DNA from: Vitrella brassicaformis CCMP3155 | Lineage: Eukaryota; Protista; Chromerida | Length of the DNA: 64,000 bases | Direction: 5' to 3' | Assembly: GCA_001179505.1 (NCBI GenBank) | Contig: CDMY01000456.1 | Coordinates: forward strand, 186,001-250,000 | Part shown: positions 16,615 through 23,256 of the stretch, piece by piece | Layout: the number at the start of each line of letters is the position of its first letter | How positions within the stretch are numbered: the first letter of the stretch is position 1 | Made by a program: the position numbers and the translations under genes | Notes under the pieces: model-generated | Told to the model about the DNA's origin: nothing | The model's database searches: none | What the model saw: the letters and a program-made list of their open reading frames with translations, nothing else

Positions 16615-18055
16615 TTACTCGACAATGCTCGTTGCCTGGAGTCCGTCGAAGTCGACCAGGTGGTCGTCCCAGTCCACAAGGCTCTCGACCGGCATCTCCC
16701 TCAGTTGGTCAAGCTGACAACCAAAAGTGTGTAACACACACGCAGGCAGAGAGTGACCACACGAGAATGAAAATGGATGCACGCCATGCCTTTCCCCCTC
16801 ACCATTTCGCGCACGAGTGGCAGTTCGTCGTTGGATGGGCACAGGACGGTGTTTGGCGGTCCTCCCCTGAGGGCTTCCTCTGTGGGCGCCTTGTTGGGGT
16901 CGGCGATCCTGTAGATGTTCTCGGGCATGAAGCTGCGGATCGTCTCGGAGAAGTGGGGGAGCCTGACCGGATGAACAGACACAACGACACAACACAACAC
17001 AACAAACCGGTACTCATGATGACAGACAGACAGACAGACAGGTGAGGGCTCACTGATAGGCGTAGTCGGAGTTGAGAAGCCTGTAGGCAGTGAATTCGCC
17101 GACCATCTTCGGCTCGCCTGACCCATTGCTGTCACTCTCACCGCTGCCCTCGCCCTGACAACCGTCAACAGAGACCAAGCAACGAGCGCATTCCCGTGTA
17201 TGAGCCTTGAGCCTTTCCAGGTGTTGGCGCATCCGGCCTGGTTTACCGGTCTCCGCAGCTCCCACACGACGCCCACGGCTGCAGCCGATCGGATTTTGCA
17301 GAGGTCGCTGAAGGCACTTACGACCGCCGTGGCTGAAAGCGCTATCACACCATTGTAGACCAGCCGACGATTTGGTGTGCGGGGATGGCGCAACTGCATG
17401 CGAAAGCTGTGGACACAAGATCAGGGAGAGAGATGGATGACTCGCACTGCACTCATGCATACCATCCGATGGATGGTTGTGGCTAGCGGCTCGCTTACGT
17501 TTGCAGTTTCTCTGCGACCTTGTTGCCCTGCACGACTGGTCTGTCCTCCACCCGCCACCTCCCCGCCCACTTAGCCGACGGCATCATCACCGTGCCGTCG
17601 TCATAAGTGAACAGCCGGTCGGGCGCCAAGATCCGCGACTTGAGCGTGTACCCATACAGATCCGCCGGCTGATACAGATGCCACACGCCCGCCACCTGCT
17701 GCTTGGTATCGCGCTGGTAGGCCTCATCAGGCGTGTCAGATATGGGCACCACCGCCCTCGCGACTTCTTTGACGGCTGTAGTGGTGTCCAGTCCGAGCCG
17801 TTGCGCCTCCTTCTCAACCTCGGGCGATGCGGGAGGCTTGTCGAGGTCCTTCGGTGGCTCCTTGAACATACTCAGCCGAGAACGATGCCGTGAGTGTGGC
17901 TGTGAGCGCTGTATGCGGGGCGGATGGCGTAACCGGACTGATGGGGCGAGGAAGGCTGCACGTGGGAGGGGTAGGGGCAGGAGATCTGCTGCTGCTGTAG
18001 CTGCTGCGGCTGCGAGTGTCCAGAGGAAGATCAGTGCCTGATGGATGAGCTCCAT
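16615..18055 (-). CDS. Putative plastid-targeted protein of unknown function (bipartite leader)
   Basis: MELIHQALIFLWTLAAAAATAAA (signal peptide), then ...RAAFLAPSVRLRHPPRIQRSQPHSRHRSRLSM (basic Ser/Arg transit-like). Five in-phase exons ending ...LQATSIVE* at 16615. Confidence 0.7.
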
Positions 18056-18328
18056 CGGTCGAAACAAACAAAGATGATATGTACCGATAGATCTTCGTTG
18101 AATCTTCGCAGCGGGCAGCCAGCTCTGTTCGCGGCTTTCTGGTCAATGCGAGCTGCGAGCTTATCTTTTGCAGCTCGGGGAAGGAGAAAGACGGAATGTA
18201 CAGCGGGGATGCGCCAGAGCCATCCCTGTTCGATTGCTGCGGTCCAACGGCATCGTGTCCAGCAGTTTGTCTCAATCAATCATGAGCTCTGCACTGGGGC
18301 CGTCCTCAAGGACCAGCAGGCAACAGAA

Positions 18329-20103
18329 ATGAGACGCCGCTTCAGATTGACCGCCCCTGCACTGATGCTGTTCCCTGCCATCGGCTGCGGGCTCAGTTTG
18401 ATAGCTTTGGCCATCACTCTGTTTGGTAAGGTCAATCAGAAGCACGTGGATCTTCGTTCATCGTTTCTCCCTCTCTGTTGTCTTCCCCTTCTCTTCAATC
18501 AGGACTTGCCGACAGCCACCCGACCAGGGCACGCGGCTGTGCAAGGCCTCCTCCACCCTCACGGCTGCGCTTTGCATCGTTTTCCTTCCTCCAGCGGCGG
18601 TCAACCATTGTCACTCTTCCCCGGCGCTCGGCGAGTGGCCTCATCGAGAGCCACGGCACGGCCTCAGAGATCATGGAGTCGACAACAAACGACAGTCATT
18701 CGAAGTCGAGCCGAACCGGCCTGCCCCTCCTCCTCAGTCTAACTTGCCGCCTTTGTCTCCTGGTGGCCCGCCTCTGCCTCCCCAAGCCGCATATGGGCCT
18801 CCTTCCCCCAATCTGCCTCCACAGGCTTACTCGAGGCCTCAGGCCGGCCCGCCCCCTCAGCCCGCAGTGTATCCCCGACCGCCACCTGCAGGCCAGCCGC
18901 CACCGAGGCCACAGCCTCCCCCGCCTGTCCCACCGATGGCGCCCCCGCCCCTGCCGGCAGGGCCTCCCCCTATGACGCAGCCGCCCGCCCATGCTCCACG
19001 GCCCATGGGTCAGCCGAACCTGCCGCCGCTTCCACAGATGGGACCGGCTCAGCCGCCGATGGCGATGGGGCCTGGGATACAGGCGCCCCCAGGCGTGCCA
19101 CCGAGTGGCATGCCGCCACAGCAGCCACAACAGCCACAACAGCCACAACAGCCGCAGGCGCAACAGCAGCAGCAGGCCGGAGGGGGCACTGCGAGCGTCA
19201 CTGATCAGGTTGGTGTCCAAGTCAAGTCCTATCTGTCTGCATATGTCGATTCCTCTGCTTGGTGCCTGGTTGCACGGGTATACTATAGGCGGTGTGTGGC
19301 GAGTGGGAGATGGCGTGTCAGCAGGAAGGAGAGAGGGAGAACCCGCTCTTTCGGAACTCTCAAGTCATGTATCTCCTGGCAAGTGCGGGTGGGGGCCAGC
19401 GCGTCTGTTATGTCGATAATTCGTTCGAGAAAAGCGAAACATGCGAAGAGTCAAAACAGATATCTGGCAAGTAACAGAACAGCAGCGTACCGGCCGGCAT
19501 GCATGGCATGCACGTGCATCTTTCATCGTCTGTGTCCCTCCAGAGTTCGCTGCCGAAGGTCAATGGCTGATCAAGGAGCAGAAGCCGCAGCAAGATGGGA
19601 GCGTCGACGTCACTGTCTCGACCTTCTGGGACCAGATCGTGGTGACTCCCCTGACCGACAAGCAGGCACACCATCTCAAAGACGACTGCAAGTGCCACGC
19701 AAAGGACCACAAGCATTGGTCCAAAGGCAAGCGGCAAGAGGTCATCGACTGCGAGACGGACCAGTGCGGCTTCACATACGCCCTCTGCCACAACCGCGTG
19801 TCGGGCCAGGCCGTCGCCGAGAAGCCCAAGAATCCTCCGGACCATGTCTCAGACAAGGGCGACTGTGTGAGTGAGGAAGTCTATCGGGTCATGCCGGGGG
19901 GAAAAGAGATGATGCTCATCGACAAGGGGGTGCCCAAAAGCAAACTGGTCAAGAAGGTAGAGTGCGACAAGGCTAAATACGGGAAGAGCTGTTTGCCGGG
20001 TGCAGCCAGGACGACACACAATGGTGGGTGGGGAAGCTTCGGCTGTGTGTTGGTCGTCATGGGGGTGCATCTGCTGATGTATGTGGGTGGGCTCATCATA
20101 TGA
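18329..20103 (+). CDS. Secreted Pro-rich, Cys-containing beta-barrel (APCDD1-like) protein A with C-terminal hydrophobic/GPI-type anchor
   Basis: Model join(18329-18425,18595-19208,19289-19466,19544-20103) is frame-consistent, using a GC-AG third intron. Hydrophobic N-terminus; Pro/Gln-rich linker; domain AVCGEWEMAC...CEESKQISEFAAEGQW...VDVTVSTFWDQIVVTP...CKC...WSKGKRQEV; tail GAA...FGCVLVVMGVHLLMYVGGLII*. Confidence 0.8.
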
Positions 20104-20307
20104 ATGAGCGACATGGATTCTTACTTACGACAGATGGACAAGAGACATAGACTGTGTGCCGCTTAGATAGACTCTGTGACCATCCCTTATCCGCTCAATC
20201 TCAAGAGACGCAATCAATGTCGGACCTATGCCTCAACACGTCCCTCTCTGCCTGTCCACAATTGCGCTCCATCCATTCAGCACATTCTCCGTGGCACAAA
20301 GACTCAC

Positions 20308-21840
20308 TCAGTCAAGCGAGAAATCGTCGTCCAGCAGTGATTTCGGTTGAGCCGGCTGTCTTGTCCTCGCTGCCCCACTTGTAGCTCTTCGAGCCTGATC
20401 CGGCCGCAGCTCGGCCGGCCGGGCATATTCTTGTCCCTGCTGCTTCTTAGGCTCGCTCCCAGCCTTTTCCTGCTCGCTCCCAGCCTTTTTCTGCTCCATT
20501 TTCTCATCTCCTTGACGAATGGCTCCCTGGAGAGACTCAGCAATGTCGCAGTCCGTCACCCGATGCCACGAGTTGGTCCTTGTGCCATGTAGCAACTGGT
20601 CAAAGAAGTCGAGTCTCGCCGCCATGCGGTAGTGGTCGTAGCCCACACACTCTTTCCATTGCTGGCCCGTTTCCTGGCAGAGTGCCTGGGTGAAGGAGTG
20701 GCACAGCTCACGGCGGCACGCAGACGGCAGCACGCTTGCTGGTTTGCCTTCGGGGAATCGCCTTGGCGGACTTGTGCAGGGGCATAGTTGCTGCAGGAAG
20801 CGAAGCTCCCTTCTGTTTGCCAATGTCACAGTGGCCGTGTCCCAATTCGTCTTGAGAGAGACGTCGACTCGAGTCCTGTTGTTTGGCGACGTCATTTGAC
20901 GCGTGTAGGTCCAGGTTCCCACAGCGACGAACTCTGCAGGAAGGATATATAAAGGGGAGAGAAGAGGCCACGTCCCTGGTCGACCTCAGGAGGCCATACA
21001 TGTCTCAAACGCACCATATACTCTGGAAGCGCTCTCACATCTGGGCGAGCGGAAGGCTGAGACGATGTGGTAAACAGTCGAGGTCGTGTAGAGCACCGTG
21101 CTTGACACGTAGGTCCCCTCGCCAGAATGGTACACGCACTGAATCACCCACGTCCCACCTGCCAATCGACAAGCAAACAAGACAAGACGGCGTTGCTCTC
21201 TCCCTCCCGTCTACTGTCTGCCTGTCTGTGTGTGTGTGTGTGTCTGTCTGTCTGTCTGTGCGTACACATTGCCTCCCTCGGCAAGAGGTCCCTTGGTTGC
21301 GGCAGCGGCCTCTCGTGAGGACGGTGCTCAGGCGTGATAACAATTGTTGTCGGCTGGGGAGGCGGATAAACCGGGATTGGGGCTGGCGGTGGGGGTGGGC
21401 CTGGGTGCACGATGCGGACGGGCGCCGGTCCTGGCGGCAGTGGTGGGTGGGCTGCTGGATGAATGGGAGGCAGGTTGGGGTTCCTTGGTCGGTGGGCTCC
21501 TGGCACGACAGCATGGATGGGAGGCAGGTTGGGGCTCCCCGAACTGGTGGAGGGCGGAGGCACGTTGCTCTGAGTGTGGTGCACTGGCTGCCGGCGCCCC
21601 AGGAGCTCAAACCATTTGCTAAGAGGGGGAAACAAGCGATTGGGCTGATTTGGGTTGGTGTAAGAGGGGATGTGCTTGACGGACAGCTGACGGACGAAGC
21701 GATGAGAGACTCGGCCTGACGACACACGTACTGTGACAAAGACTGAGACAAGAGCTTGATTCGCTTTTGTTTCTCTCACCAAACGATGTGTTCGCAGCCG
21801 CGAAGGCCAGAAATAGGATACGCTGCCACAGCCGACGCAT
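20308..21840 (-). CDS. Secreted Pro-rich, APCDD1-like protein B (paralogue of A, no membrane anchor)
   Basis: Model complement join(20308-20933,21015-21158,21266-21715,21780-21840) is frame-consistent. MRRLWQRILFLAFAAANTSF signal; Pro-rich linker; domain AMCGTWVIQC...CESASRVYEFVAVGTW...VDVSLKTNWDTATVT...CPC; hydrophilic acidic end SLLDDDFSLD*. Confidence 0.8.
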
Positions 21841-22087
21841 AGCCAGCCGAGAAAGGCGAATGCAGACGCAGCTCCGACAGACTCTGCCTGCCGTTGCGCT
21901 TTGAGTTAACGTTGTCCCTCCGATGGGGGCAGCCCCCACGTGAGACGCGTCTGACTCCCAATGGCTCTTCAAGTTCCCCCTCCTGGTCCACGCCAACGAA
22001 GACACCGGCATCGTGTCCGTGCGCACACCAAACAGGTATGTACGCCCCCTTCTGCAGCATGAACGTTCTTCCCGAAATCTCCCTGCC

Positions 22088-23256
22088 ATGCATCGACGGT
22101 GCCTGCAGGAGCCGCTGGCGAAGGACGGTGCCTTCTTCCTCACGGGCGTTGAGGCGGATGACCACCCGGCCATGCCGGAGCCCCCGCCGCCTCCCCTCAG
22201 CACCGCCGCCCTCATCAACCGCTACAAGAACATCTATTGGGCAATACAGCCCTCACGAAGCTTCGTCCCTGCTGCCATGCCGGCCGTCGGTCATGATGGG
22301 GCAGTCGGTGAAGAGGTGACATATGGCGGTCTGATGGAGGATGTGGAGGCTCTCAGCCTGGCCCCTGCGCGCAAGAAGATGGCTGAGTTGCGCGGCATGA
22401 TCTGCGAGACGGACAAGAAGATGAAGAGACAGAAGTCGGAGCTGCATTTGCTGAGGGCGGTGAGTGAGCGAGCGGGCAGCGGACGAGACGACGGCATGCA
22501 GCCAGCCTTTCAGGCATGGTGTCTGTCTGTTCTGTCAGGGTGTGGAGGGCATGAAGCGAGATCTGATAGACATTGCTGCCGGTGAGGGGGAGGGCGGGGC
22601 GGCGAGAGGCCTCGCCGACTCTGACAGAAAGAGAGCACTGCCTCCCACGACAAACAACACGTGAGTAGAGGCGCACAGACAGGCAGGCAGAACCAGCCAT
22701 CATTTCCCGCTTCCCTCCACACACACACACACATGGATGCAATGCAGGTCTTCCTCGGCGCTTGAGCCATTTTCCCAGTCCGCCCACCAGGTCGCCCGTC
22801 CCACTTCACGGGGCGGCTTCTTCCGCTCTGTGCGCACCCTGACAGCCCTGCCGGCACCCGCAGCAATGCTGGAGGACTACAGCCCATCTGCAGTGCCGCT
22901 GTCGCTGGAGAGGGCGGACAAGCACAAAGCACTTCCAAGCCTGTCTCCAACCATAGCTACAGGGAATGGTGAGAAAGAAAGTGCCTGTATGCCTGTCTAC
23001 GGTTGAGAGAGTGCCTTCCTTATTGCGTGTGTCTCGTGCAGTGCACTCAGTGTCGAAGCTGCTGCATCAAGATACTGTCGGTGCCAGCCACACCACGAGG
23101 TACGTGTGAGTGTAAGGGTGACATTGATTGGCTCATATATCTGGCCTGCATGATGTCATGTGGTGTGTGTGCTGTGCGCTCAGACGTGAGCAGCTGAAGG
23201 CTGGGGCCAGACGCAGAAGCCTCACAACCACCACCGCTGACACACCCACAGCATGA
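22088..23256 (+). CDS. Hypothetical protein with short coiled coil
   Basis: Five in-phase exons (about 22088-22459, 22539-22660, 22748-22968, 23043-23100, 23184-23256) with gtgagt/gtacgt donors; ARKKMAELRGMICETDKKMKRQKSELHLLRA heptads. Confidence 0.6.

What the first reader, a model, noticed from the sequence alone, without database searches (positions are those of the whole stretch)
18329..21840. Convergent pair of diverged paralogues with an APCDD1-like Cys/beta-barrel domain: one anchored, one soluble
Hidden by splicing, genes A and B align motif for motif: AVCGEWEMAC/AMCGTWVIQC; CEESKQISEFAAEGQW/CESASRVYEFVAVGTW; VDVTVSTFWDQIVVT...L...CKC / VDVSLKTNWDTATVT...L...CPC; GK..V..C....C..ALC; DCV/ECV; VECD/TDCD. 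Both have a signal peptide ended by a ttt-g|gt phase-1 intron and a Pro-rich stalk. The pattern GxW..C, C...(F/Y)...G, VTP.....A..L and W..G..Q.V..C resembles my recollection of the APCDD1 barrel (vertebrate Wnt antagonist with a lipid-binding pocket). Alveolates have no Wnt pathway, so this would be an ancestral lipid-binding surface module. The anchored form (A) plus secreted form (B) suggest a receptor/decoy or cell-wall lipid-capture pair. The paralogy is seen in the sequence; the APCDD1 identity and function are inference.
Basis: partly seen in the sequence, partly recalled or inferred. Interest (0 to 1): 0.8.

Follow-up and report, generated by a model that had tools for sequence, protein, structure and literature searches.

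The report
Paired orphan cysteine-rich surface-protein genes
Two neighbouring, tail-to-tail genes of the alga Vitrella brassicaformis are real, transcribed, old duplicates. They encode secretory-type proteins with a proline-rich stretch and a 10-12-cysteine domain that has no detectable relatives, and the proposed link to the animal Wnt inhibitor APCDD1 could not be shown and remains only a weak lead.

Summary
The paralogy is real. The last exons of gene A (+, 18329-20103) and gene B (-, 21840-20308) align at 31% identity over 87 aa (E 1e-8). The preceding exons align with z 7.3 against shuffles. All 10 cysteines of B match cysteines of A, and one phase-1 intron sits at the same spot in both (…E|F…).

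Spliced contigs from public runs confirm all three B introns and three A junctions, including a GC-AG intron. B is identical to the public Vitrella brassicaformis protein CEM14601.1 (426 aa, unnamed).

One flaw: the only A intron-1 junction seen (18425|18503) puts the signal-peptide ORF out of frame with the rest. The public annotation starts A at an internal ATG (18936). A's secretion and anchoring therefore remain inferred.

No relatives were found in 1.84 billion representative proteins or in metagenome contigs. Pfam, including APCDDC PF14921, and PDB sequence searches gave no hit. AlphaFold2 models were unusable (pLDDT 34-40), so the fold could not be tested.

The only pointer to APCDD1 is a sub-threshold language-model match (0.76) for B whose top three clusters are all PF14921.

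Verdict: an orphan, lineage-restricted pair of probable surface or wall proteins. APCDD1 homology is unproven (about 0.3).

The parts
18187..18328 (+). Gene A 5' UTR, at least from the start of the RNA contig. It holds uATGs at 18196 (29-codon uORF) and 18209 (in frame with ATG 18329).
   Evidence: X5 record 14 starts at 18187; translation; sequence.
18329..18425 (+). Gene A exon 1 coding part: a signal-peptide or signal-anchor-like ORF (basic MRRRFR, then 26 hydrophobic residues). It ends TTT G|GT in phase 1.
   Evidence: the donor is used in the RNA contig; Kyte-Doolittle maximum 2.9.
18426..18502 (+). Gene A intron 1 as seen in RNA (GT-AG, 77 nt).
   Evidence: Joint 18424->18502, cut +1 (X5 record 14).
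18503..18594 (+). A 92-nt stretch retained in the only RNA contig. Its presence breaks the frame between the signal-peptide ORF and the Pro-rich/Cys frame. It ends in a polypyrimidine tract plus CAG and contains a GT at 18539, so it could be intronic in a productive isoform that was not observed.
   Evidence: sequence.
18595..19208 (+). Gene A Pro/Gln-rich exon (33% P, 14% Q). The public annotation starts the CDS at ATG 18936 inside it.
19209..19288 (+). Gene A intron 2 (GT-AG, 80 nt, phase 0).
   Evidence: Joint in X5 record 15.
19289..19466 (+). Gene A exon 3: N-terminal part of the Cys domain (4 Cys).
19467..19543 (+). Gene A intron 3: GC-AG, 77 nt, phase 1, at the same position as B's last intron.
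   Evidence: Joint 19465->19543 with 1 ambiguous base; sequence.
19544..20103 (+). Gene A exon 4: C-terminal part of the Cys domain (8 Cys), small residues (PGAA), then a 21-24-residue hydrophobic C-terminus (GPI-signal-like). Stop at 20101-20103.
21780..21911 (-). Gene B exon 1: 5' UTR from at least 21911, ATG at 21840, a 20-residue signal peptide. It ends TTT G|GT in phase 1.
   Evidence: X1 record 2 and X5 record 15; P0001.
21716..21779 (-). Gene B intron 1 (GT-AG, 64 nt).
   Evidence: Joint in X1 and X5.
21266..21715 (-). Gene B Pro-rich exon 2 (29% P).
21159..21265 (-). Gene B intron 2 (GT-AG, 107 nt, phase 1), holding a (GT)n/(CTGT)n microsatellite at about 21211-21269.
   Evidence: The record coordinates of X1 record 2 and X5 record 15 leave exactly 4 letters for 21269-21266. 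Agrees with P0001.
21015..21158 (-). Gene B exon 3: N-terminal part of the Cys domain.
20934..21014 (-). Gene B intron 3 (GT-AG, 81 nt, phase 1), homologous in position to A intron 3.
   Evidence: Joint in X1 and X5.
20160..20933 (-). Gene B exon 4: C-terminal part of the Cys domain (7 Cys), a charged low-complexity tail, stop at 20308-20310, and a 3' UTR reaching about 20160, 57 nt from A's stop.

Best explanation
A and B are an inverted local duplication, now about 30% identical, in Vitrella brassicaformis. Both share one gene plan: a short exon with an N-terminal signal sequence, a Pro-rich exon, and two exons encoding a disulfide-rich domain of about 190-210 aa (10 shared Cys).

B is a secreted soluble protein with a charged C-terminal tail. 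A carries a C-terminal hydrophobic, GPI-signal-like tail directly after the domain. If it enters the ER, it would be tethered with the Cys domain next to the membrane and the Pro/Gln-rich segment pointing outward.

The most likely role is structural or adhesive, at the cell surface or in the cell wall, in the manner of algal chimeric Pro-rich/globular glycoproteins.

The domain belongs to no family detectable by sequence. It is lineage-restricted or evolves fast.

Shown: paralogy, transcription, splicing and B's full model. Inferred: secretion, disulfides, the GPI anchor, and the surface or wall role.
For: - Paralogy.
- Shared phase-1 introns, after the signal exon and at E|F inside the domain.
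- Spliced contigs covering gene A in one public run and gene B in two.
- B's model is identical to CEM14601.1 / A0A0G4FKW2.
- Even Cys counts (10 and 12), with all of B's conserved in A.
- Signal-like N-termini, A's hydrophobic C-terminus preceded by small residues, and B's hydrophilic C-terminus.
- 29-33% proline in exon 2.
- No relatives: exhaustive HMMER against 1.84 billion representatives found only B itself plus a spurious tandem-repeat protein. Word searches, the metagenome scan, Pfam and PDB sequences found none either.
Against: - For A, the only intron-1 junction seen in RNA (18425|18503) leaves the signal-peptide ORF out of frame with the Pro-rich/Cys frame. The public annotation starts A at the internal ATG 18936, without a signal peptide.
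- No signal-peptide or GPI predictor was available.
- There are no extensin-type Ser-Pro(3-5) repeats.
- No localisation or protein-level data exist.
- The wall or surface role is inferred from architecture alone.
Confidence: 0.65

Rival explanations
1. The Cys domain is a very distant single-copy homologue of the APCDDC domain (PF14921). That domain is the beta-barrel plus helix-loop module present twice in animal APCDD1. On this reading the Vitrella domain binds a lipid or other hydrophobic ligand at the cell surface, with A membrane-bound and B soluble.
For: - The language-model feature search of B puts three PF14921 clusters first (0.75-0.76). All ten best family-bearing hits share that family or clan.
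- The domain length (about 190-210 aa) fits the roughly 205-230-aa Apcddc domain. Single-domain 205-aa versions are reported in a few bacteria (bioRxiv 10.1101/843714).
- The low-confidence AF2 secondary structure shows beta-hairpins followed by a helix at the VT(P/L) motif in both A and B.
Against: - The 0.76 score is below the tool's own noise guide. A third of shuffled proteins reach 0.8, and a third get ten same-family hits.
- A's exon 4 gave no usable hit in the same tool.
- There is no PF14921 hit at E up to 10.
- There is no APCDD1 chain in the PDB sequence searches at E up to 10.
- The A/B profile found no APCDD1 protein at E<=0.001 among 1.84 billion proteins.
- The domain has 10-12 Cys. 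ABD1 and ABD2 have 3 and 2 intradomain disulfides (PMC10193966).
- Foldseek with the poor model shows nothing.
Confidence: 0.3
2. Gene A no longer makes a secreted protein. Either its mRNA encodes only a short out-of-frame product from ATG 18329 and the gene is decaying or regulated by unproductive splicing, or it is translated from ATG 18936 as a cytosolic tail-anchored protein.
For: - The observed splice breaks the frame, with a stop at 18973-75.
- The public annotation starts at 18936.
- There are uATGs in the 5' UTR.
- An extreme C-terminal hydrophobic segment is also what a tail anchor looks like.
Against: - The 336-codon downstream frame is intact and correctly spliced, including a GC-AG intron.
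- All 10 family cysteines plus a further pair are kept. That pattern makes sense only in the secretory pathway.
- Exon 1 is a homologous signal exon with the same TTT G|GT phase-1 end as B.
- Contigs drop rare or alternative isoforms (tool note).
- Two simple splice alternatives would restore the frame: acceptor 18595, or removal of 18539-18594.
Confidence: 0.25
3. The A/B resemblance is chance similarity between two unrelated Cys-rich ORFs.
For: Exon 3 alone gives no BLASTP hit, and the Pro-rich exons are not significantly similar.
Against: - E 1e-8 over 87 aa, and reciprocal best hits in the window.
- z 7.3 for exon 3.
- 10 of 10 Cys aligned, with equal spacing of 33 residues between the last two.
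- Same intron position and phase.
- The genes are adjacent.
Confidence: 0.02

Closest known systems
APCDD1 / Apcddc domain (Pfam PF14921; structures 8E0P, 8E0R, 8E0W)
   Same: - Cell-surface or secreted context.
- Similar domain length (about 200 aa).
- A membrane-anchored form exists.
- A sub-threshold language-model match names this family.
   Different: - No HMM or sequence match.
- Single domain instead of two apposed barrels.
- 10-12 Cys per domain against 4-6.
- An N-terminal Pro-rich region is present.
- A GPI-like tail instead of a transmembrane helix with a cytoplasmic end.
- Alveolates lack Wnt, so any shared role could only be generic ligand binding.
- The fold could not be tested.
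Algal chimeric hydroxyproline-rich glycoproteins (Pro-rich rod plus globular Cys-containing domain, such as volvocine wall proteins and pherophorins)
   Same: Signal peptide, a long Pro-rich segment and a compact Cys-rich globular domain, in an organism with a thick cell wall.
   Different: - No sequence relation was found.
- No Ser-Pro(3-5) repeats.
- A's Pro-rich part is also Gln-rich.
- A different lineage (chromerid alveolate, not green algae).
- Based on general knowledge, not tested here.
Apicomplexan GPI-anchored Cys-rich surface antigens (SRS/SAG1-like, 6-Cys s48/45)
   Same: Alveolate relatives; signal peptide, disulfide-rich domain and C-terminal GPI signal; families expanded by local duplication.
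   Different: - No Pfam match to the SRS or s48/45 families.
- Different Cys number and spacing.
- Pro-rich N-terminal region.

Membership tests
APCDD1 / Apcddc (PF14921) | Match to the Pfam PF14921 profile at or near the gathering score | tested here: not met
   hmmscan at E up to 10 gave no PF14921 row for P0001, P0001:160-365, or A exons 3 and 4. A's domain could be tested only exon by exon.
APCDD1 / Apcddc (PF14921) | Detectable sequence similarity to solved APCDD1 chains (8E0P/8E0R/8E0W) | tested here: not met
   The A/B profile and B's domain were searched against PDB sequences at E up to 10. There were no hits apart from one unrelated TbpB hit at E 0.67.
APCDD1 / Apcddc (PF14921) | Fold: two curved antiparallel beta-sheets forming a barrel, joined by a helix-and-loop subdomain (PMC10193966) | tested here: inconclusive
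   AF2 mean pLDDT was 34.5 (B domain) and 40.5 (A exon 4). Foldseek against PDB gave TM<=0.2 and no APCDD1 chain, which is meaningless with such models.
APCDD1 / Apcddc (PF14921) | Domain length about 205-230 aa | tested here: met
   A: 59 aa plus about 150 aa. B: residues about 169-350. Compare the roughly 210-aa domains and the 205-aa bacterial proteins.
APCDD1 / Apcddc (PF14921) | Two to three intradomain disulfides at conserved positions | tested here: not met
   The Vitrella domain has 10 (B) or 12 (A) Cys, against 3 and 2 intradomain bonds in ABD1 and ABD2. Positions could not be aligned because no APCDD1 sequence was available by reference.
APCDD1 / Apcddc (PF14921) | Hydrophobic ligand pocket / lipid binding | not testable with these tools
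   This needs a reliable structure or a binding assay.
GPI-anchored surface protein (gene A) | N-terminal ER signal in frame with the mature protein | tested here: inconclusive
   A signal-like ORF exists, but the one observed splice puts it out of frame.
GPI-anchored surface protein (gene A) | C-terminal signal: small omega residues, a short polar spacer, and a hydrophobic stretch of about 15-20 residues running to the C-terminus | tested here: met
   The C-terminus reads PGAA, then a 10-residue polar spacer, then 21 hydrophobic residues to the stop, with Kyte-Doolittle up to 2.7. This is by inspection only, with no dedicated predictor.
Extensin-type hydroxyproline-rich glycoprotein | Repeated Ser-Pro(3-5) motifs | tested here: not met
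   The Pro-rich exons have 29-33% Pro but no repeated SPPP(P) units.

The most novel reading that the evidence does not exclude
The A/B domain is a genuine, extremely diverged Apcddc-type barrel in a photosynthetic alveolate. The literature treats the Apcddc domain as restricted to some animal phyla plus a few bacteria. On this reading it would be an older eukaryotic surface ligand-binding module, present here as a membrane-tethered and a soluble copy.
Probability: 0.3. Interest if true: 0.55.

Novelty: new member of a known kind. Interest (0 to 1): 0.3.

Why it matters
As it stands, this is an ordinary orphan gene pair. It improves the annotation of one Vitrella locus:
- gene A has a GC-AG intron;
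- the public model of A probably lacks 26 codons, and it lacks an N-terminal signal exon;
- A and B are paralogues.

It would matter more if the APCDD1 lead held. The Apcddc domain is described as a taxon-restricted animal novelty, and its ligand pocket is thought to catch the Wnt lipid. A homologue in an organism without Wnt would date the module earlier and point to a generic lipid- or hydrophobic-ligand role.

Tried and rejected
- Pfam on every exon piece and on full B: nothing, apart from a YkuD_2 match at E 0.047 and 13.6 bits against a cut-off of 27, taken as noise.
- Word search with A exon 4 and with B's domain: only B itself.
- Exhaustive HMMER with the A/B exon-4 profile: B itself plus P0002, a 1261-aa tandem-repeat translation matched 20 times over 26 columns, rejected as spurious.
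- Metagenome scan: none.
- ESM Atlas features for A exon 4: no usable hit.
- PDB sequence searches: none relevant.
- Two AF2 runs, both unusable. Foldseek on the B model: noise.
- Aligning A exon 3 as a separate row misplaced its second half, so it was left out of the folding alignment.
- Similarity between the first 60 residues of the Pro-rich exons, to decide on A's acceptor: not significant, z below 1.
- Looking for the APCDD1 sequence as text, in the PNAS supplement and by motif words in the paper library: not held. No profile-profile comparison with Apcddc could therefore be run.
- No further paralogue in the window.
- The scan's own notes hold nothing on APCDD1.
Full report
**What is there.** The window is GC-rich (about 60%) eukaryotic DNA. 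Protein P0001, recovered below, identifies it as Vitrella brassicaformis CCMP3155, contig CDMY01000456.1. Two genes face each other tail to tail between 18329 and 21840.

**Gene models from RNA.** Logan contigs of four public runs were laid on 17900-22300. Two runs behave as DNA, with contigs running through introns (X4, X6). Two carry spliced contigs (X5, X1).

For gene B (minus strand) the joints are:
- 21780|21715 (64-nt GT-AG intron);
- 21015|20933 (81 nt);
- 21266|21158 (107 nt). The tool masked a microsatellite here, so this joint follows from record coordinates, which leave exactly four letters for 21269-21266.

Translating those exons gives exactly the 426-aa database protein P0001, which is CEM14601.1 / A0A0G4FKW2, 'unnamed protein product'. 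B's transcript runs from at least 21911 to about 20160.

For gene A (plus strand) the joints are:
- 18425|18503 (77 nt);
- 19208|19289 (80 nt);
- 19466|19544 (77 nt). One base is ambiguous, and the canonical reading is a GC-AG intron.

**A problem at A's 5' end.** With the observed acceptor at 18503, the ORF that starts at ATG 18329 continues in a frame that stops at 18973-75. That ORF has a basic start followed by 26 hydrophobic residues.

The Pro-rich/Cys-domain frame is open from 18504. Upstream of the splice, however, it has a stop at 18283-85 and no ATG. Its first Met is at 18936, and that is where the public annotation starts the gene (310 aa, window 18936-20103).

The figure of 310 aa fits an annotated GT-AG intron 19389-19543 in place of the RNA-supported GC-AG intron. 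That would drop 26 codons. This is arithmetic inference and was not checked against the record.

Two alternatives would restore the frame:
- removal of a further GT..AG stretch, 18539-18594.

Neither appears in the contigs, though contigs drop minor isoforms. A's entry into the ER is thus inferred from homology with B and from its cysteines. It is not shown.

**Paralogy.**
- Exon 4 against exon 4: 31% identity over 87 aa, E 1e-8.
- The two are reciprocal best tblastn hits in the window, at E about 2e-6.
- MAFFT extends the match to the last shared Cys. The spacing between the (D/E)CV and (E/D)CD motifs is 33 residues in both.
- Exon 3 gives no BLASTP hit. A gapped alignment including B's three preceding residues scores 49 against 20 +/- 4 for shuffles (0 of 5000).
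- All ten Cys of B's domain align with Cys of A. A has one extra pair.
- The last intron interrupts the same Glu codon, in phase 1, before the same Phe in both genes.
- The signal exon ends identically in both.
- The intron before the domain differs by 7 nt (phase 0 in A, phase 1 in B).
- The Pro-rich exons (33% and 29% Pro) are not alignable.

The pair is therefore an old inverted local duplication.

**Architecture.**
- B has a 20-residue signal peptide, about 150 Pro-rich residues, a Cys domain of about 180 residues, and a charged low-complexity tail.
- A has a signal-like exon, about 205 Pro/Gln-rich residues and a Cys domain of about 210 residues. It ends with PGAA, a 10-residue polar spacer and 21 hydrophobic residues running to the stop, which is the form of a GPI signal.
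- Because the anchor follows the domain directly, the Pro-rich part is not a stalk beneath the domain. It would be a distal extension.

**Relatives.** None were found.
- The word searches returned only B.
- An exhaustive HMMER search with the A/B profile over 1.84 billion representatives returned only B and a spurious repeat protein.
- The metagenome scan returned nothing.
- Oddly, the annotated A product was not returned by any search. This is unexplained.

**The APCDD1 claim.** According to the 2023 structure paper (PMC10193966):
- the APCDD1 ectodomain is two apposed beta-barrel domains, each with a helix-loop subdomain;
- ABD1 and ABD2 have 3 and 2 intradomain disulfides, plus one interdomain bond;
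- there is a lipid pocket in ABD2.

A 2019 preprint describes the roughly 210-aa Apcddc domain as restricted to some animal phyla, plus 205-aa proteins in a few bacteria.

The tests run here gave:
- no PF14921 hit at E up to 10;
- no APCDD1 chain in the PDB sequence searches;
- AF2 mean pLDDT of 34.5 and 40.5, so no usable model;
- Foldseek noise only.

The fold could therefore not be tested, and sequence membership is not met.

One result points the other way. The language-model feature search for B lists three PF14921 clusters first (0.75-0.76), and all ten best family-bearing hits are in that family or clan. By the tool's own calibration this is within noise. I treat it as a lead worth a proper HHsearch and put homology at about 0.3.

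No APCDD1 sequence could be obtained by reference, and I did not type one from memory. No profile-profile comparison was therefore possible.

**Most likely function.** These are secretory-pathway surface or wall proteins of a thick-walled alga. A is membrane-tethered and B is released. This rests on architecture only.

The joined A protein was never built, searched or folded.

**Earlier scan notes.** They gave the organism lead (a chromerid of Vitrella type), which I confirmed. One note mentions another pair of Cys-rich GPI-anchored proteins elsewhere in this genome (s1-233326), which I did not examine.

Noticed in passing
window:21874-21918: A stretch of about 35-45 nt between the 5' end of gene B and the next plus-strand gene. 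In all four runs its depth is 10-60 times that of its flanks. Many short contigs on both strands continue into unlike sequence. This looks like a high-copy short repeat sitting in a divergent promoter. There is only one copy in this window.
   Followed up: partly
window:19467-19543: A GC-AG intron in gene A, supported by a spliced contig. The length of the public model (310 aa) fits a GT-AG substitute, 19389-19543, which would delete 26 codons including two of the domain's cysteines.
   Followed up: partly
window:20104-20310: The stop codons of A and B are 204 nt apart. B's transcript reaches 20160, and one RNA contig (X5 record 15) runs through both genes. The 3' UTRs therefore probably overlap in antisense.
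   Followed up: no
window:21211-21269: A (GT)n/(CTGT)n microsatellite inside B's second intron. The reads tool masked it as a repeat.
   Followed up: no
window:18076-18187: Gene A and the upstream minus-strand gene (annotated 296 aa, window 17869-16615, no Pfam family) are head to head. Their RNA contig ends are only about 110 nt apart, which suggests a compact bidirectional promoter.
   Followed up: no
window:19289-19570 and P0001:169-230: The motif G-x-W occurs twice in each protein: CGEW and EGQW in A, CGTW and VGTW in B. MAFFT once aligned the second copy onto the first. This may be an internal beta-hairpin repeat.
   Followed up: no
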